Below are positions 33,847-43,862 of a DNA stretch of 64,000 bases, piece after piece. Under the pieces are notes generated by a model. The model was given only the letters and a program-made list of their open reading frames with translations, searched no databases and was not told where the DNA came from. The stretch is from Guillardia theta CCMP2712 (Eukaryota; Protista; Cryptophyta): NCBI RefSeq assembly GCF_000315625.1, contig NW_005434619.1:398991-462990 (forward strand), given 5' to 3'. The translations under genes were made by a program, and so were the position numbers. Within the stretch, counting starts at the first letter, position 1. Each line of letters opens with the position of its first letter.

Positions 33847-33972
33847 CTGCTGCTGCTCCTGCTGCTGTGCTGCTGCTGCTGCTGCTGCTGTGCTGCTGCT
33901 GCTGCTGCTGCTGCTGCTGTGCTGCTGCTGCTGCTGTGCTGCTGCTGCTGTGCTGCTGCTGCTGCTGCTGCT
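33847..33972. repeat. Interrupted (CTG)n microsatellite
   Basis: Direct observation. Confidence 0.9.
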
Positions 33973-34244
33973 CCCAATGTCCCAACCCTCCTCCTCCTCC
34001 CCCTCCTCCTCCTCCTGTCCCCGTCCTCCTCCTGCTCCTCTATGTACAGACGCATCACATGCGCAGAAATCTAGAGAACGGTAGGGTAGGTGGAGATATC
34101 ACTGGGGTCACTACTACTATATCTTACACAATGAGGGGTACTTTGAACTATTAATTTGGGGGTTACCAACTTGTTATTCATGCACAGGGTGGGTACTTTA
34201 ATTTTGTGAGTAGGTAGGGGTCCCTAAAGTCCGGTGAAAAAGGA

Positions 34245-36443
34245 ATGAAAGTTTGCGGGCATGCTGCCGACGAAGTTCTGAGAAGGAAGCAGGTGAAGGG
34301 GAGGAGGAGGAGAGACGAGGGACGAAGGAGAGGATCATGGTAGGAGGGATGAAGAGGCAAGCTGGGAGAGATGAAGGAGGGGGAGTGAGCGAGGAGTAAG
34401 GGATGAAGGAAACACGAAAAAGCAGAAAGGGAGGGACGCGCGGAGAAGGGAGCGAGCAGAAAACAGGAGTTGGGAGGGAGAGGATGAGAAAGATTCTTAC
34501 GTGGGGTACGCCAACAACGGTGATCGGAAGTGCTGCAGGTGAAGTTTGAAGTGCGCGTGCAAGCTGAGGAATCTAGGAGGTGTGTAGACTCAGCTGCGGA
34601 GAGGGGAGTCCCCCTACATAAGATCATCAAGAGCATGGTGTTTGTCTGCCAGAGCCGAGGAGACGAGCAAGGTTCTCATAACTACCTGCATTGTATGGTT
34701 CCTGGACATTGCCAGGTGAGGGACCTTGGAAGAGGAGGGAGAGGAGGGAACGAGAGGGAAGGGGGGGTGCGGGGGGGAGAGGAGGAATCGAGAGAAGGGA
34801 GAAAAGCGGGAGGAGAGACGAGAGGAGGGAGGCAGGAGATGAAGAGGAGGTACGTAGGCGGAAGGGATATCGAGGGGAGGGAAGTGAGAGAGTGGAGGAG
34901 ACGAGAGTAGGTGAGGGAATAGAGCGCTTGGCAGCATACTCAGTAGCAAGCAAGGTCTCCAGAAGCAAACTTGAGGCGCACGTGGGCTGCGAATGTTCCT
35001 TGCTAGACCCCGACAGGATGAGGTGACCAGCTGGGAAGGGAGGTGGGGGATGAGAAGAGGACCCGCAGGTCCATCACGGGAGCTGACATAGGAGCTGTGC
35101 ATCCCTTCGTCCCCGGCGTATCGAGGAGGATCCTGGACCAGCGAGTGCTGGCGAACGAGGTAGGGAGGGGAGGAGGAACGATGTTGCGGCAGTTTCATGC
35201 TGTTTGCAAGACGATATCGTTCAACAGTGGGGATATGAAAGTCGGCCTGATTGTGAAAACAGAGGTGAAACCTGTCGCACCATTGTTTTGTTCGTAACGT
35301 TTCTCGTCAGGATTTTCTGGACGCGTTCGAAGGAGAAATTACGTGCGCTGATATTGCATGTAACAATTGATAGACTTCTCCAACTTCTTCACGCCATTTT
35401 GATTCTATCTTAAGATTGTGAGGAAGACGACTACACACCAGTTGCTAAGGTGACGATTCCGTGTAACTGCTCTTGTATGTAGGGTTGTTACGAGAGCTCA
35501 TTGTGTTCCAGACATTCGGAATAAGCCTGTCTGATGCTAAATATCTCGTCGACCGACCAAACGCGCTGGGTGAGGTTTGCTAGAGAAAAGATCTTGTGGA
35601 GGACTGAAAGTCATCGAAGATTATTTCTCAAGATGTGTAAAAGAGATCGGAGACGAACGTACTAACTGCTCGGTTGATCTCTTTTGCCCTACCAGCTCAT
35701 GTTATTGATGCTGTCTTCTCCTGCACAGACTATTGCTAAAACTCTGGATTGGATTAGAACGCTTGTAAGGTTTGCGAGCCAGGTCAAGCTCGACAGAGGA
35801 TTGCTATGACCTGAGGTGAAAATGTAACAGTTATAACAGAACAACTCAAGCATCGAAGTCGTTAGCACTTCATGGATGAAAGAGCTGATAATGAGGTGTA
35901 GTCTCGGGCCCTTGCCTTACAGTCTCTCAGTGGTTGACAGGGAGAATACAACGAAATATGCAAGAGAACAGGAAAGGTGTTGTTCACAACTTGTCCATAT
36001 CGAATGACAACTACCTTGTAGGCTCTGAAAGCATACGTCGTCAGCGGAACTCCACCGTCATTGCCACAAGAACAACAAGAAGATCAGGCTGTGATATCGC
36101 GATTTGTGCAGCAGGTCACTGCGATCATCCTGTACCATCGTGATTGAGACTGTAGACTTTGGAAAAGCATGCGGATGTCGTAGCGAAAATGAGGTATCGA
36201 TGAATCGTAGTGCACCACTTCTCCTTTCTCACCGGGCGCTACAGGCAGTCCCGACCACCGGCATCGAGGGAGAAAGACAAGATGATAAACTTCCTGATGG
36301 TAAGGAAACAATGAGGTGGGGCAAGCCTCTGCTGAACAGATGTCCGTCCTAAGGGTGAGGTCATGAAAGAAACAGCGGGGAGGTTAGCTCCGAAAGAAGT
36401 CAGAAAGGTGATCATTGAAAGTCTTCAGCCCAGCAGTCACTGA
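34245..36443 (+). CDS. YbaK/INS-superfamily aminoacyl-tRNA deacylase fused to a GatB helical/Yqey tRNA-binding domain
   Basis: N-half CVDSAAERGVPLHKIIKSMVF...ITGADIGAVHPF...RILD..ISFNSGDMKVGL; C-half FGISLSDAKYLV..ALDYFSRCV..DWI..EDQAVISRFVQQTLEKHADVV..DKMINFLMGEVMKETAGRLAPKEVRKVI; many short exons, a few internal junctions uncertain. Confidence 0.8.
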
Positions 36444-37837
36444 ATCACCGGGGAATAAAAACGGTACCTGCGAGCCTCCTCGGCTGCCGGAATAACTTCC
36501 ATCGATCACGAGTAGTACGCTGCTCAATGTACCAGCTGACTCAGATATGGATCGCACTGACACGTCGAGTTGCCGAGACTCTCAGCCTGTATTTGTAGCA
36601 CAGGGACGAAGAGGCGGGGTCTTTTTCCTAGCCATCTTCCTAAGGCTCCTCCTATGTCTGGACCCTGTTTCGTCACCGTGCATTAAACTCGGTCTTGAGC
36701 AAAACCAGTGAGGCTTGTTAGTACAGCTGGGAGTAAAGAAGCTGGGGTCAACATGATGTCTGCATCACTTCTGTGGCATACTAAGTTTACAAGTCTCCGT
36801 CACTCAGTTGAAACCCGAGCCGGGGTCCAGGAATCAAACTTCAAATTGCCTTTCAACTTGTTTGATGGGTGGGCCGCCGGGCCGCCGGCCGCCGCCGGGC
36901 CGACCGGGCCGGTGACCGGACTTATTTCACAGTGAGCATCCAACCGTTGGCAAGCCTGACCGTACCGTACAGTGAAGTGAGTCAGTTTCTATTGACAGAC
37001 GGTACGGTAAGACTTAGAGGAAAGACTGGCACGGTGCGTGAGTGGCAACGGGGTTTCAGTCGCAAAGGAGCCCGCCGCGTTGAAGGGGCTGCTCCTGCGA
37101 CTTGCAGCCACGAGCTCGCAGCTCCCCGGAGACAATCCGATTGTCAACGTCATGTCCCATCATGTGACTGATAAGTTAGCGGCAGAGCCCCGGACAAGCC
37201 CTTCAAGGGTGCCCTGGGTAAGGACATTTTAGAGTTCCGAAGTTCCGAGTTCTCAGTGAATTTCCGGCTCGAACGGGCCCTCAGGCCCCCGCTGACCTCA
37301 GGGCCTCTTTCGACCTTTCGACCGACGGTGATGCTATAAAGAAGAGTTTCTGAAAAGACTCCTCTTCGTTCACGTATAGTTAACCTCAAAGTCGTATTTG
37401 ACAAGGGGAAAAACGAAAAAGTCTGTTTTCGAGCGCTTTCTTCAGGTTCATCATTATTATTTTATGACCACACGGGTCATATTACAAAGATTTTTGAACT
37501 TGGAGCTGATGGGTGGGTATGAAAGGGAGAATAGGGGGGTGAAGGTGAGGGGGGTGGGTCAGCGAACGTGAAAAGGGTGGACACAGGAAGTTGACTGGAA
37601 GTTGACTGTGGGAAAGTAGATGGAGAGGGGGGAGGGGGTGAAAGGTGGGTGGGGGAAAAAGGGGGGTGGTGAGAAGTGGCGATCAAGGTTCGGAGGGTCT
37701 CTGCCTTGAATTGGACCGTTACAGGTCAAGAGGGTAGGTGAAGAGAGGGAAAGATGGGGGTAGGGGTTCCTCATGACTTGTATTCGAGGGGTCACTGAAT
37801 CTTGAGATAGGTAGGGGTCATAAAGAAGGAAGGACCG
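36419..37837 (+). repeat. Direct repeat copy X (end of the YbaK gene plus intergenic DNA)
   Basis: Colinear with 42062-43862; both begin aagtcttcagcccagcagtcactgaatc and end aaggaccg. Confidence 0.9.
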
Positions 37838-39794: not shown

Positions 39795-42064
39795 TTAAGC
39801 CTGTCCAGACATAATCGTCTCCCCGGTTCCCATGGGCTGTGCTGGCGCTGGGACGGGCTGCATGTTCACCATGTTGATTTCCTGGGGTTGCCCCTGCTCC
39901 GCATCAGCCTGCAGCAGCATCGTCAGCAATGGCCTCGGACAACCCTGTCCTCTCCCACCTGCTTGCCGTGGTAGGAGAACACATCCTTCCACTCCGTTGC
40001 CCCGTGCACAGAGTACTTGTGCTGACCGTGCATCGAAACTTGGGTGATGGGTTGATCTGATTCAAGGTAAGACCGTGAACGAGGTTGGAAGAGTAAAGGA
40101 ATGAGGACGAGGAAAGAGGTGGGAGAGGAGGAGGACGAGGAGAGGAAGGAAGAAGACGAGAGGAGGAGAGCAAGAAGAAAAGAGTGATTGTACCTGGAAC
40201 ATGTCGCTTGCCTCCCACCAAAACATCATAAATGTCCTGTCGCACCTCCCAGATGGGATAGATGACGGTAATGATAGCAGCAACGTGTCCCTGTGCAAGG
40301 AGTAAGAGAAGAGAAGGACGAGGACGAGGAAAGACGGAGAGGGGTGAAGCACGGGGTGGAGGACGGAGAGATGAAAAGAAGGGAGAAGGAGGAAAGACGG
40401 AGGGGAAGGGAATGACGGAGGACAGCTGACGTACCCAGATGAAAGCGATTGCGACCCAGAACCCAAAGTAGCTCTTGGTGAACTCACGCGCGGGAAGGGC
40501 GAGGATGGGCCAGATGAGAATCAGAACAATCGAGAGAGATCCTCCGTAGACGGAGGTATTCCAAAGAGCCCTGTCCATAGCCTGTAGGGAGTGAGCAACG
40601 CTGGGGAAGAGCAGGTAGTAGTCTTACGGCAACGCCGTCTTCACCATCGTCGTCGAGCTTCAAGCCAGTAGCGTGCTCTCCGGCGTCCAACACAACAACC
40701 TATCTCACGCATAAGAACAAGACAAGCTCAACGGAGAGGCGCTGCGAAGAAGAGAGCAACACGAGAGAGGATGAAGAGACGAGGAGAGACGTGTAAGGGG
40801 AGAAGGTTGAGGGGAGCGGCAAAGGCAAAGGAGGAGAGCATCTGAACTCACCCCGTCGGTCTCGGCTCTGAGCTTAGACCAGTCGTAGTTCTGAGGGGCC
40901 ATGAGAGAGATGGGAATGCCGACCATGGGAGAGATGAAGAGAGCCATCAGGTTGCCTCCCAAGAAGGCGTAGTCGCTGCCCATGTTGGCCACGTTGACCT
41001 CGCCGTAGTAGGTGTCGGCGATCACCAGCCAGGTGATCATGGCAGCGGCAAGACCAGCAAAGGCACCGCAGATGGCACCAGTGGCAGAGCAGTCCTTCCA
41101 AGTGAGGCAGGCGGCGAGAGGGAACACAGCAGAGCCGATGAAGTTGCCCATAGCCACGTAAACCCAGCCAAGGCCAATCTCCAGCTCGAACAGGATGATG
41201 GCGATGACACCGGAGAAGATACCCCAGCCGAGGACAGCGACACGAGAGACGAAGATGATGTCGGTGCCGGAGGCCTGAGGTCTGAAGTACCTCTTGTACA
41301 CGTCGTAGGCAAAGAGGGAAGCAACGGCGAGCTGCTCGGAGTTTGCGGTGGATGTCACGGCCAAGAAGAGCTGGAGAACGATCAAGAAGGCTCCTCCCTG
41401 TCCCATGACGTGCAGGGCAACAGCTGGAGGAACGAGGCCGGAGCCAGCCTCGCTCATGGTAATCGGAAGATCAAGAGCCCTGGCAGCAAGGCCGAGGGTG
41501 GTGGCCATACTGAAAGGGATGGCGAACCAGGCCATGCCTCCAAGCATGTAGCCCTTCCAGGTAGCAGAGGGCTTGCAAGCGACGGCTCCCTGCCAGTAGG
41601 ACTGGTCGACGAACACGGTGCCGAAGTTTCCGATGATGTTGGCGATACCGAAGATGAGACCACCGCGAGACCAAATGGTGAGGGGGCTGCCGTGCAGGTT
41701 GCCCGTGATGGGGTTCTTGAGGGTGATGGCCTTGAGATTCTCCCACACCTTGTCGGTCGATCCGAGGTCGGAGGGTCCAGCGTAGATCTTCCACATGAAG
41801 ATGAGGAGGGCGAAATAGATGATGGAAGTGTGGGACCAGGAGGCGTAGTATGTTCCTACAAGCTAGTCAGATGCTGCAGCACTAGGAATGATGAATAAGA
41901 CAGGAGAAGGTAAGGAAGTGGAGCAGAACAGCAGCAGGATAGAACAAGGTCTCACCCTTAAGACCACCGAAGGCAGTGTATCAAACAGTGCTGAGAGGAA
42001 TGATGAAGCAAGCGGCGTACGTGTTGACTCCAGTCAGGGCGTTGATAACCGCGGAACCACCAAG
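39795..42064 (-). pseudogene. DUR3: 5'-truncated copy of the DUR3 urea transporter
   Basis: Begins mid-exon ([12 protein letters not shown]) at the 42061-42064 junction; the first exons are missing. Confidence 0.85.
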
Positions 42065-43862
42065 TCTTCAGCCCAGCAGTCACTGAATCACCGGGGAATA
42101 AAAACGGTACCTGCGAGCCTCCTCGGCTGCCGGAATAACTTCCATCGATCACGAGTAGTACGCTGCTCAATGTACCAGCTGACTCAGATATGGATCGCAC
42201 TGACACGTCGAGTTGCCGAGACTCTCAGCCGCCTGTATTTGTAGCACAGGGACCGTCGAAGAGCTTCGGAGGGTCTTTTCCTAGCTGGAACCTGTTTTGT
42301 CACCGTGCATTAAACTCGGTCTTGAGCACTGAAAACCCGGCCTGTCTTGTTACAGCTGGGAGTAAAGAACTCGGAAGGCTGGGGTCAACATGATGAGTGT
42401 CCATCACTGAGTTGAAACCGTTGAACCCGACTCCGGCGAGCGGGCCCAGGAATCCTCAAACTGCCCGGACTCGAGTTTCAAGTTTAAGTTGGTGGGCCGC
42501 CAGGGCCCGACCGTCCCGGTGACAGACTCTCCGGACTTCTGACAGGCTTTACTCAAAGTTAAGTTAAAAATCAGTACGACAGCCTGGCAGTGAGCATCCG
42601 GGGCGAGCCAGTGAGTCAAACTTTGAGTACTTTTACTTTGAGTAAAGACTGACTGAGTGCTCCTGATTGTCCTCGTACTGATTTTTAACTTAACTTTGAG
42701 TAAAGACTGAGTGCGTCAGTGGCAACGGGGTTTCAGTCCGTCACCGGAGTTGTCAGTCGCAAAGGGCCCGAGCACGGGGAGAGCCCGCAAGGGGCTGCAA
42801 GCCCGTGGCGGTTGGCGTGAACTTATTGATGTCACACTCCTGCGAGCCAACTCGAGCTCCATGGCCAATCTCAATTGCGAGTCGTTTGGCGCTCTTGCAG
42901 CCACGAGCTCGCAGCTCCCTGGAGACAATCCGATTGTCAACGTCATGTCCCATGACTTAGCGGCAGAGCCCCGGACAAGCCCTTTAAGGGTGCCCTGGGT
43001 AAGGACATTTTAGGTGAGGACCACACCGTGTGACAAGTTCTCAGTAAATTTCAAAATCACTGTCGACGGGCCCCCTTTGGATTTGAAATTTTGGAAGCGG
43101 ACATACCGACATTGATGCTAAATAAGAATTGCGAAAAGTGAAGGAAACTACCAGCAGTACCCCCATCAATGACTCTGAAGGACCCCCTTAGACAGAAAGT
43201 AAATTTTTCAGTGAGCCCAGCAAGAGGGCCGTTTCTGAAAAGACTCCTCTTCGTTCACGTACAGTTACCCTCAAAGTCGCACCTAGTCAAGAGACGCATT
43301 GTCGTGGCCTTTGAAAGTTTACAAAGTAAGGGGGGTCATCGTAGTACCCTTTGCTGGGTAGTAGATGACAGGAACACGATTGGTGGGGTCATTTTCCTCA
43401 TGTAGATGGGGTGGCAGCAGTTGACAAGAAAAAAACGAAAAAGTCTGTTTTCGTGCGCTTTCTTCAGGTTCATTATTATGACCACATGGGTCATATTACA
43501 AAGATTTTTGAACGTGGAGCTGATGGGTGGGTATGAAAGGGAGAATAGGGGGGTGGAGGTCAGGGGGTGGTCAGTGAACGTGAAAGGGGTGGACACAGGA
43601 AGTTGACTGGGGGGAAAGTAGATAGAGAGGGGGGAGGGGGTGAAAGGTGGGGATAAAGGGGGTGGTGAGAAGTGGCGATCAAGGTCCGGAGCGCGCCTTG
43701 CATTGGACCGTTACAGCTCAAGAGGGTGGGTGAAGAGAGGGAAAGATGGGGGTAGGGGTTCCTCATGACTTAGGGTCGAGGGGTCACTGAATCTTGAGAT
43801 AGCTAGGGGGTGGGGGTGGGTATGACGCAGGGGGATTGGGGGATATAAAGAAGGAAGGACCG
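42062..43862 (+). repeat. Direct repeat copy X' (upstream region of intact DUR3)
   Basis: Colinear with 36419-37837, with patchy replacements and insertions. Confidence 0.9.
42547..42705. repeat. Perfect 33-bp inverted repeat with 93-bp spacer
   Basis: ctttactcaaagttaagttaaaaatcagtacga (42547-42579) and its exact reverse complement (42673-42705). Confidence 0.95.

What the first reader, a model, noticed from the sequence alone, without database searches (positions are those of the whole stretch)
34245..36443. YbaK trans-editing deacylase fused to the GatB/Yqey tRNA-recognition module
Seen: splicing the many short exons gives an N-terminal YbaK/ProXp-like domain. It has the conserved Lys in IIKSMVF and the GxxxP loop (GAVHP). 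The C-terminal half follows GatB's helical and Yqey tail (FGISLSDAKYLV..ALDYF..DWI; NFLMGEVMKETAGRLAPKEV), with no GatB catalytic cradle. Known: free-standing YbaK (Cys-tRNAPro deacylase) has little intrinsic tRNA specificity. The GatB tail/Yqey binds the tRNA elbow to select tRNAGln/Asn, and it is appended to Deinococcus GlnRS. Inference: this is a self-targeting tRNA proofreading factor, possibly clearing misacylated tRNAs such as Glu-tRNAGln or Asp-tRNAAsn. I do not know of this architecture being described. The ORF track misses it because the exons are tiny.
Basis: partly seen in the sequence, partly recalled or inferred. Interest (0 to 1): 0.85.

Follow-up and report, generated by a model that had tools for sequence, protein, structure and literature searches.

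The report
YbaK deacylase fused to GatB tail
A 16-exon gene of the alga Guillardia theta makes one mRNA for a 349-residue protein that joins a YbaK-type tRNA proofreading enzyme to the tRNA-gripping end of GatB. This is a rare domain combination that nobody has studied, and the public gene model, cut short after 185 residues, had hidden it.

Summary
Spliced transcript contigs from three public runs fix a 16-exon gene at window 34245-36443 (+). One 1400-nt contig spans exon 2 to the 3' UTR, so both halves sit on one mRNA (349 aa).

- **N-half:** passes Pfam tRNA_edit (56.9 bits). It keeps the catalytic Lys (K47) and the GxxxP loop (G106-P110).
- **C-half:** aligns to the helical and tail (YqeY) domains of GatB right to the C-terminus (hhalign 94-97%). 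An orthologue model matches S. aureus GatB 295-479 (Z 11). There is no cradle domain.
- **Organism:** Guillardia theta. Its public protein XP_005829093.1 (185 aa) stops after exon 7 and lacks the C-half.
- **Relatives:** colinear fused orthologues form a small family of unnamed marine eukaryote sequences plus the cryptophyte Hanusia. One of them passes both Pfam cut-offs.
- **Prior knowledge:** an ESM-Atlas cluster of 83 archaeal proteins carries both domains, so the architecture is not unique. I could not retrieve those sequences, and I found no paper on this fusion.

Most likely this is a trans-editing aminoacyl-tRNA deacylase that uses the GatB module to bind the tRNA elbow in cis. I rate it a new variant of a known kind, of moderate interest.

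The parts
34245..34292 (+). Exon 1 (aa 1-16), with the ATG start. An in-frame TAG lies 30 nt upstream.
   Evidence: Joint 34292/34539 is seen in the X3 contig only. The model was built. It matches the start of the public protein P0001.
34539..34715 (+). Exon 2 (aa 17-75), the N-terminal part of the tRNA_edit domain. The catalytic Lys K47 codon is at 34629-34631, inside IIKSMVF.
   Evidence: Joints in X1, X2 and X3. This exon alone hits Pfam tRNA_edit positions 2-42, E 0.0075. The Lys column is invariant in family alignment A1.
34955..35022 (+). Exon 3 (aa 76-98)
   Evidence: Joints in X1, X2 and X3.
35069..35159 (+). Exon 4 (aa 98-128). The GxxxP loop GAVHP (G106-P110) is at 35091-35105.
   Evidence: Joints. 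G, H, P and the following FVPG are invariant in A1.
35211..35264 (+). Exon 5 (aa 129-146), carrying the SFNSGDM motif of the deacylase domain.
   Evidence: Joints. The A1 profile hits it in the own genome.
35311..35359 (+). Exon 6 (aa 147-163), the end of the tRNA_edit domain.
   Evidence: Joints. In P0001 tRNA_edit spans aa 27-150.
35415..35449 (+). Exon 7 (aa 163-174), an acidic linker. The public gene model reads on into the intron after this exon.
   Evidence: Joints. The P0001 sequence departs from the spliced model after '...TPVAK'.
35512..35569 (+). Exon 8 (aa 175-194), the start of the GatB-like helical domain (FGISLSDAKYLV).
   Evidence: Joints. The hhalign match to GatB begins here, at about GatB position 336.
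35620..35672 (+). Exon 9 (aa 194-211)
   Evidence: Joint 35672/35729. My first guess at the donor (35658) was wrong and broke the frame.
35729..35782 (+). Exon 10 (aa 212-229), carrying DWIRTLVRFA, the family's most conserved C-half motif.
   Evidence: Joints. W, R, V, R, F and A are nearly invariant in A1.
35840..35895 (+). Exon 11 (aa 230-248)
   Evidence: Joints.
35941..35971 (+). Exon 12 (aa 248-258, TKYAREQ). It is followed by the non-canonical GA..AG intron 35972-36021.
   Evidence: Joint 35969/36020 with 3 ambiguous letters, the same in X1, X2 and X3. No GT..AG, GC..AG or AT..AC reading is possible.
36022..36114 (+). Exon 13 (aa 259-289), the end of the helical domain and the linker.
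   Evidence: Joints.
36156..36193 (+). Exon 14 (aa 290-302), the first helix of the tail domain.
   Evidence: Joints. One X17 raw RNA read crosses 36193/36245.
36245..36299 (+). Exon 15 (aa 302-320). It carries the basic stretch SREKDK (36264-36281), at the place of GatB's Lys-rich motif, and the start of FLMG.
   Evidence: Joints. Alignment to GatB. The motif is described in PMC2811023.
36354..36443 (+). Exon 16 (aa 321-349 plus TGA), the last helices of the tail. GEVMKETAGRLAP corresponds to GatB's D-loop pocket (V449, M452, G457, P461).
   Evidence: Pfam GatB_Yqey positions 125-148, 18 bits. The joint 36299/36354 is seen in X1 and X3, but the intron is retained in X2 and in further X1 and X3 contigs.
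36444..36735 (+). 3' UTR. From 36419 onward the sequence is duplicated at 42062-42253.
   Evidence: The X2 contig is contiguous from 36243 to 36735. blastn gives 98.4% identity over 192 nt.

Best explanation
This is a single-copy nuclear gene of Guillardia theta (public locus GUITHDRAFT_111965, whose model is truncated). It encodes a two-module protein.

Residues 1-165 are a YbaK-like member of the INS/tRNA_edit superfamily with the catalytic Lys and the GxxxP loop intact. Residues 175-349 are the helical plus tail (YqeY) domains of GatB, without GatB's catalytic cradle.

**Inferred mechanism.** The protein is a free-standing (trans-editing) aminoacyl-tRNA deacylase. The GatB module does what it does in GatCAB, and what its YqeY relative does in Deinococcus GlnRS: it lies along the tRNA and grips the elbow (D-loop and variable-loop region). 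That would hold the aminoacylated CCA end in the deacylase pocket. In effect the YbaK domain takes the place of the GatB cradle on a ready-made tRNA-measuring arm. This would supply in cis the tRNA affinity, and perhaps selectivity, that single-domain YbaK lacks.

**Shown:** one mRNA, the domain identities, conservation of the catalytic and tail motifs, and a conserved colinear family.

**Inferred:** catalysis, the tRNA-binding role of the C-half, and the compartment. Most homologues carry a signal-peptide-like N-terminal extension followed by an R/S-rich stretch, which suggests plastid targeting. The G. theta model has none.
For: - **One mRNA:** 15 joints, and a 1400-nt contig spanning both halves. 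CDS of 1050 nt with no frame break.
- **Single copy in the genome**.
- **N-half:** tRNA_edit at 56.9 bits in P0001. The orthologue model against H. influenzae YbaK 1dbx gives Z 19.2, rmsd 2.1 A over 149 residues. K, G..HP and SFNxGDM are invariant in A1.
- **C-half:**
  - hhalign of the G. theta C-half to GatB 336-503/504 gives Prob 94% alone and 97% with the family.
  - P0009 170-351 aligns to NCBIfam GatB model positions 303-479/481, E 1.6e-8, and to the GlnRS/YqeY fusion model.
  - P0003 passes the Pfam GatB_Yqey cut-off, 29.8 against 27.
  - Model residues 169-358 match S. aureus GatB 295-479 (Z 11.0). Residues 169-279 match A. aeolicus GatB 298-412 (Z 12.0, rmsd 2.8). The yeast and human GlnRS tRNA-binding N-domains score Z 7.8-8.3.
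  - The A1 profile finds haloarchaeal GatB C-termini at E 2e-7.
- **Tail features:** the pocket pattern V..M....G...P and a basic stretch are kept, and the tail has pI 9.9. Their roles in GatB are described in PMC2811023.
- **Orthology:** the G. theta N-half is 44-46% identical and the C-half 31-37% identical (E 6e-38) to the fused homologues, colinear end to end.
- **Precedent for appended domains raising tRNA binding:** the plant ProXp-ala CTD (PMC9425024) and the Deinococcus GlnRS YqeY domain (PMC1865053).
Against: - No activity or binding data exist.
- The N-domain scores far below the YbaK equivalog cut-off, so its substrate cannot be read from homology.
- The AF2 inter-domain geometry is unreliable (pTM 0.49), so the idea that the arm places the CCA end in the pocket is not tested.
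- The last intron is retained in many contigs. That form ends the protein before the final tail helices.
- The 5' end, and therefore targeting, is unresolved in G. theta.
- The GatB_Yqey Pfam cut-off was not reached by G. theta sequence itself. Only a 29-aa exon could be submitted.
Confidence: 0.62

Rival explanations
1. The GatB tail reads tRNAGln/tRNAAsn identity, and the enzyme hydrolyses Glu-tRNAGln and/or Asp-tRNAAsn, or other mischarged forms of those two tRNAs. It would act as a safety valve of the indirect (transamidation) pathway, probably in the plastid.
For: - Every characterised context of this module concerns tRNAGln or tRNAAsn: GatB and GatE, Deinococcus GlnRS, and the eukaryotic GlnRS N-domain.
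- The D-loop pocket pattern of the tail is kept.
- Homologues carry presequences that look plastid-type. From my own knowledge, plastids use the indirect pathway.
Against: - In bacterial GatCAB much of the discrimination (U1-A72) lies in the cradle domain, which is absent here (PMC2811023).
- According to the review passages read, characterised INS-superfamily pockets take small residues (Ala, Cys, Ser, Thr, Abu), not Glu or Asp.
- Hydrolysing the obligatory pathway intermediate would be wasteful.
- The G. theta model has no presequence.
Confidence: 0.15
2. The C-half is mainly a protein-protein or dimerisation module, as in the plant ProXp-ala CTD or the T. brucei MCP3 NTD. It might dock on a synthetase or on GatCA, and would not be a tRNA-binding arm.
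For: - Appended domains of other INS enzymes do mediate dimerisation (PMC9425024; PMC11286415).
- The helical domain of GatB packs against other parts of GatCAB.
Against: - The tail is basic (pI 9.9) and keeps the residues of the tRNA pocket.
- In GatB the tail is essential for tRNA binding.
- The GatA- and GatC-contacting cradle is missing.
Confidence: 0.1
3. It is a non-catalytic tRNA-binding protein. The YbaK-like domain would be a pseudo-enzyme used only to hold the acceptor end, for example as a chaperone or transport factor for aminoacyl-tRNA.
For: - The N-domain is very divergent from YbaK (33 bits on TIGR00011).
- YbaK-like domains occur in non-editing proteins such as SadB.
Against: The catalytic Lys, the GxxxP loop and several other pocket motifs are invariant across the family at only 44-60% overall identity. 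That pattern suggests selection on an active site.
Confidence: 0.08
4. It is an artefact: two neighbouring genes, a chimeric assembly, or a decaying pseudogene.
For: - The public annotation stops after exon 7.
- One intron is non-canonical, and the last intron is often retained.
Against: - Contigs from three runs in three studies carry the same 14-15 joints across both halves, with an intact frame.
- The same fusion is encoded without introns on marine contigs and in several other lineages.
Confidence: 0.02

Closest known systems
YbaK / 'ProX' free-standing trans-editing deacylases (H. influenzae YbaK 1DBX; T. thermophilus TTHA1699 2CX5/2Z0K; A. pernix APE2540 1WDV)
   Same: - Same fold: Z 18.5-19.2, rmsd about 2 A over about 150 residues.
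- Same Pfam family.
- The catalytic Lys and the GxxxP loop are present.
   Different: - Those are single-domain proteins of about 150-160 aa. This one carries a 175-residue GatB-type extension.
- It fails the YbaK equivalog model by a wide margin.
- Sequence identity to them is only 18-24%.
GatB subunit of GatCAB amidotransferase, helical (295-407) and tail/YqeY (412-475) domains
   Same: - The C-half aligns to exactly these two domains, right to the C-terminus.
- It keeps the tail pocket pattern and a basic stretch at the place of the Lys-rich motif.
   Different: - There is no cradle (GatB_N) domain, so no kinase or transamidase site.
- It is not expected to assemble with GatA and GatC.
- It is fused instead to a hydrolase.
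Deinococcus radiodurans GlnRS with a C-terminal YqeY domain (PMC1865053)
   Same: The same tRNA-binding module is appended in cis to an enzyme that acts on the acceptor end. NCBIfam's model of that fusion matches P0009 166-350.
   Different: The partner there is a synthetase, not an editing hydrolase. The organism is a bacterium.
Plant ProXp-ala with a plant-specific helical CTD (PMC9425024)
   Same: It is an INS-superfamily trans-editing enzyme roughly doubled in size by a helical C-terminal domain that raises tRNA binding.
   Different: - The catalytic domain there is ProXp-ala-type. Here ProXp-ala structures score lower than YbaK-type ones.
- The plant CTD has no recognised homology to GatB or YqeY, according to that paper. 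I could not test that here.
ESM-Atlas cluster 'YbaK/EbsC family protein' (83 members, 302 aa, 96% Archaea) with PF04073 and PF02637 in all members
   Same: It has the same pair of Pfam domains. It is the nearest Atlas cluster by language-model features (0.93).
   Different: - It is known to me only as a cluster label.
- Its sequences could not be retrieved.
- It was not found in six-frame searches of 289 sampled archaeal genomes.
- Domain order and homology to the algal family are untested.
Eukaryotic GlnRS N-terminal tRNA-binding domain (yeast 3TL4, human 4YE9)
   Same: It is a GatB-tail-like two-lobed helical module used in cis to bind tRNA. It matches model residues 169-358 at Z 7.8-8.3.
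   Different: - The match is much weaker than to GatB itself.
- It belongs to a different Pfam family (tRNA_synt_1c_R1).
- It is attached to a synthetase.

Membership tests
INS / YbaK superfamily (Pfam tRNA_edit, PF04073) | Domain score above Pfam's gathering cut-off | tested here: met
   P0001, which equals exons 1-7 of this gene, scores 56.9 bits against a cut-off of 25.5, over profile positions 3-122 of 123.
INS / YbaK superfamily (Pfam tRNA_edit, PF04073) | Conserved catalytic Lys (K46 of H. influenzae YbaK) and the GxxxP loop | tested here: met
   K47 lies in IIKSMVF, and the loop is G106-A-V-H-P110. Both are invariant in the family alignment. The Lys aligns with the Lys of 1WDV. Their role is stated in PMC9425024.
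INS / YbaK superfamily (Pfam tRNA_edit, PF04073) | Hydrolysis of a mischarged aminoacyl-tRNA | not testable with these tools
   This needs a biochemical assay.
YbaK proper (Cys-tRNAPro deacylase, NCBIfam TIGR00011 equivalog) | Score above the equivalog cut-off | tested here: not met
   Scores are 32.8 bits (P0001) and 23-37 bits (orthologues), against a cut-off of 153.
GatB_Yqey domain (PF02637) | Domain score above Pfam's gathering cut-off | tested here: inconclusive
   For G. theta only the 29-aa last exon could be submitted: 18 bits against a cut-off of 27, E 0.0027. Orthologue P0003 passes at 29.8 bits. P0009 and P0011 carry PF02637 in the precomputed table.
GatB_Yqey domain (PF02637) | Homology to the GatB helical and tail domains over their full length | tested here: met
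   - hhalign of the G. theta C-half against GatB gives Prob 94-97% over 156-161 columns, ending at the GatB C-terminus.
- The structure match runs from model 169-358 to 3ip4_B 295-479, Z 11.
GatB (amidotransferase subunit B) | N-terminal cradle domain (GatB_N, PF02934) with the kinase/transamidase site | tested here: not met
   The N-half is tRNA_edit. NCBIfam GatB models match only their own positions from about 300 to the end. No PF02934 signal was found at this locus or anywhere else in the genome by six-frame search.
Plastid-targeted protein of a complex-plastid alga | Signal peptide followed by a transit peptide with an aromatic residue at +1 | tested here: not met
   The G. theta model starts directly at the domain, and no presequence-like exon lies in the 14 kb upstream. 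Homologues do have 'LRVALLASLSLSS..AW' followed by an R/S-rich stretch, judged by eye only. The 5' end of the G. theta mRNA is unsettled.

The most novel reading that the evidence does not exclude
The GatB helical and tail arm gives this deacylase built-in tRNA identity reading through the elbow. That would make it a trans-editing factor dedicated to tRNAGln and/or tRNAAsn, policing the transamidation route in algal plastids. It could do this by clearing Glu-tRNAGln or Asp-tRNAAsn that escape GatCAB, or by removing other amino acids mischarged on these tRNAs. This would be the first editing enzyme that selects its tRNA through a borrowed amidotransferase module instead of through a partner synthetase.
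Probability: 0.15. Interest if true: 0.8.

Novelty: new variant of a known kind. Interest (0 to 1): 0.55.

Why it matters
Free-standing YbaK-type editing enzymes are thought to have little tRNA specificity of their own and to borrow it from a synthetase. A natural fusion to the tRNA-elbow-binding arm of GatB suggests another solution. It is directly testable by comparing the full-length protein with a form lacking the C-half, on panels of mischarged tRNAs.

The fusion also extends the list of enzymes that have recruited the GatB/YqeY module beyond GatB, GatE and GlnRS. It shows that the public G. theta protein model is truncated, which is why this architecture is invisible in annotation of the one cultured, sequenced organism identified here as encoding the complete fusion.

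The family is small: a few algal lineages, and possibly an archaeal cluster. Any effect is therefore likely to be lineage-specific rather than general.

Tried and rejected
- **My first hand-made splice model broke the frame.** I had picked wrong donors for exons 9, 10 and 12. The transcript joints corrected it.
- **Six-frame Pfam searches of the genome are insensitive here.** PF04073 missed this gene altogether, and PF02637 gave only 13 bits on the last exon. So the lack of any GatB_N hit in the genome says little.
- **The search for related loci in genome contigs with the family alignment found nothing.**
- **I could not retrieve the archaeal fused cluster.**
  - Five named genomes gave only ordinary GatB.
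  - PF04073 searches of samples from four archaeal phyla (61, 66, 71 and 91 genomes) and of ten further genomes gave only plain YbaK, or a MazG-like plus tRNA_edit fusion.
  - Pfam on every long open frame showed no PF02637.
  - A local profile of the C-half also found nothing.
- **Word-based protein searches reached only the algal family.** This held both for the C-half alone and for the alignment.
- **I looked for an upstream presequence exon and found none.**
- **The 13 odd letters at the 5' end of the X2 contig remain unplaced.** They occur once elsewhere in the genome, on another contig, at chance level and without a donor site.
- **T. brucei MCP3 and the L. major YbaK-like proteins, which I recalled as possible precedents, are not GatB fusions.**
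- **The spliced 349-aa protein was never typed into a tool.** All tests on it used exon references, the public partial model, orthologues or local scripts.
Full report
**What is there**

The window is part of contig C55 of an 87.1-Mb, 669-contig genome. An exact protein look-up identifies the organism as Guillardia theta CCMP2712.

I laid contigs and reads from four public runs on window 34050-36850. This gave 15 splice joints, identical in runs X1, X2 and X3 wherever those runs cover them. With these joints, a script assembles 16 exons into a 1050-nt open frame of 349 codons.

- One X2 contig of 1400 nt runs from exon 2 to 36735.
- One X3 contig runs from exon 1 to exon 15.
- One raw RNA-seq read (X17) crosses joint 36193/36245.

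The two halves are therefore on one mRNA. Fourteen introns are GT..AG and 41-246 nt long. Intron 12 (35972-36021) can only be read as GA..AG.

**Limits of what could be tested**

The spliced protein has no reference, so by the rules it could not be sent to Pfam, the protein databases or the structure tools. Tests on it used exon references, the public partial model, orthologues and local scripts.

**N-terminal half**

The public protein for this locus is P0001 (XP_005829093.1, GUITHDRAFT_111965, 185 aa). It is identical to exons 1-7 and then reads into intron 7.

- It scores 56.9 bits on Pfam tRNA_edit, against a cut-off of 25.5.
- It scores only 32.8 bits on the YbaK equivalog model TIGR00011, against a cut-off of 153.
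- K47 (in IIKSMVF) and G106-P110 (GAVHP) are present, and both are invariant across the family.
- An AlphaFold model of orthologue P0009 (mean pLDDT 76.8) superposes residues 7-167 on H. influenzae YbaK at Z 19.2 and rmsd 2.1 A. It superposes on T. thermophilus and A. pernix 'ProX' at Z 18.5-18.9. ProXp-ala structures score lower.

**C-terminal half**

- The last exon alone hits Pfam GatB_Yqey positions 125-148 (18 bits, E 0.0027).
With the family alignment as query, this rises to 97% and E 5e-11. G. theta residues of about 174-345 correspond to Haloferax GatB 336-503 of 504.
- Orthologue P0009 residues 170-351 align to NCBIfam GatB model positions 303-479 of 481 (E 1.6e-8), and also to the GlnRS/YqeY fusion model.
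- P0003 passes the Pfam GatB_Yqey cut-off.
- Model residues 169-358 match S. aureus GatB 295-479 (Z 11.0). Residues 169-279 match A. aeolicus GatB 298-412 (Z 12.0, rmsd 2.8 A).

In S. aureus GatB the cradle domain is 1-294, the helical domain 295-407 and the tail 412-475 (PMC2811023). So the C-half is the helical plus tail domains, and the cradle is absent.

The tail's D-loop pocket pattern (V449, M452, G457, P461) is kept as GEVMKETAGRLAP. A basic stretch (SREKDK; K.GKK in an orthologue) sits where GatB has its Lys-rich motif. The tail has pI 9.9.

**Relatives**

- An exhaustive HMMER search with exon 2 found only eight proteins.
- Word-based searches with an orthologue and with the family alignment found 9-17 clusters.
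- All of these are unnamed metagenome or metatranscriptome sequences, except G. theta and a fragment from the cryptophyte Hanusia phi.
- The full-length ones (P0003, P0009, P0050, P0049) are colinear with the G. theta protein from end to end. Identity is 44-46% in the N-half and 31-37% in the C-half.
- P0003 is encoded without introns on marine contigs of 61-63% G+C.
- Most homologues have an N-terminal extension with a hydrophobic 'LRVALLASLSLSS..AW' stretch followed by an R/S-rich region. By eye this looks like a bipartite plastid presequence. The G. theta model has none, and no such exon was found upstream.
- The gene is single-copy in G. theta.

**Is the architecture known?**

I found no paper that describes a tRNA_edit plus GatB_Yqey protein.

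Known appended domains in this superfamily are different. They are the plant ProXp-ala CTD, which aids tRNA binding and dimerisation, and the T. brucei MCP3 NTD.

The combination is in databases, however:
- The metagenomic orthologues carry both Pfam hits.
- The ESM Atlas holds a cluster of 83 mostly archaeal 302-aa proteins in which every member has both domains.

I could not retrieve or verify that cluster. Samples from four archaeal phyla (289 genomes) held only plain YbaK genes, or another fusion.

**Function**

G. theta also has a ProRS with an N-terminal tRNA_edit domain, a second tRNA_edit gene, and an open frame combining a 3'-5' exonuclease domain with tRNA_edit. Ala-tRNAPro editing is therefore probably covered elsewhere.

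The best-supported reading is an active trans-editing deacylase whose GatB arm binds the tRNA elbow in cis. This parallels the YqeY domain that lets Deinococcus GlnRS bind tRNAGln productively. Catalysis, tRNA binding, substrate and compartment are all inferred.

It is weakened because part of GatCAB's tRNA discrimination lies in the missing cradle, and because the known pockets of this superfamily take small residues.

**Verdict**

This is a rare, expressed, uncharacterised variant of a known kind of enzyme, hidden in this species by a truncated gene model.

Noticed in passing
window 35972-36021: Intron 12 has GA..AG ends. The other three registers allowed by the 3-letter ambiguity are AG..GT, GG..TA and AA..GG. 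The same joint appears in contigs of three runs. It is either a genuinely non-canonical intron or an error in the assembly at 35973.
   Followed up: partly
window 36300-36353: The last intron (54 nt) is retained in the X2 contig, and in further contigs of X1 and X3 at a depth similar to the spliced form. The retained form ends the protein at '...NFLMVRKQ', before the last tail helices.
   Followed up: no
window 34245-34292 (exon 1) and the X2 contig's loose end: The X2 transcript contig carries 31 letters (ending ...TACCTGTCGAGCG) in place of the first 27 nt of exon 1. They join at a site with no AG acceptor and are not in the window. The only genomic match to the 13 letters is on another contig, at chance level. 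This could be an alternative 5' exon or a chimeric contig.
   Followed up: partly
window 36419-36607 and 42062-42253: The last 25 nt of the coding sequence plus the 3' UTR are duplicated 5.6 kb downstream at 98.4% identity, and further diverged pieces follow. The duplication boundary lies inside the last exon. No second copy of the rest of the gene exists in the genome.
   Followed up: partly
window 36588-36775: Very high contig depth in run X3 (469 to 2647, against about 10 over the gene), just downstream of the 3' UTR. No tRNA or Rfam family is there. The signal may belong to the duplicated copy or to an unannotated abundant transcript.
   Followed up: partly
window 33850-34040 and introns 1-2 (34293-34538, 34716-34954): A long imperfect CTG/GCT trinucleotide array followed by a CCT-rich tract lies just upstream of the gene. 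The two long introns are almost pure purine (GGAGGA-type) on the coding strand.
   Followed up: no
L003 (G000:C57:140971-144243), minus strand 589-2454: One 622-aa open frame in G. theta combines a 3'-5' exonuclease domain (DNA_pol_A_exo1, 65 bits) with a tRNA_edit domain (31 bits). This is another unusual partner for an editing domain.
   Followed up: no
L005 (G000:C18:904324-907470): The G. theta prolyl-tRNA synthetase carries a tRNA_edit domain at its N-terminus, the ProXp-ala-ProRS arrangement reported for protists and fungi.
   Followed up: no
L147:657-1406:+ (an archaeal genome in the phylum sampled around a Thermococci MAG): A 249-aa protein joins a MazG-like nucleotide pyrophosphohydrolase domain (69.5 bits) to a tRNA_edit domain (90.9 bits). 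Open frames of 251-252 aa with the same tRNA_edit hit recur in about ten genomes of that sample.
   Followed up: partly
whole genome G000: No GatB_N (PF02934) signal was found anywhere in the G. theta nuclear assembly by six-frame search. The only GatB_Yqey signal is this gene's last exon. The method also missed this gene for tRNA_edit, so absence of a true GatB is not shown.
   Followed up: no
ESM Atlas: There are clusters of bacterial aspartyl-tRNA synthetases (Chlamydiota, CPR) with a tRNA_edit domain attached, and an actinobacterial DUF1918 plus tRNA_edit fusion.
   Followed up: no
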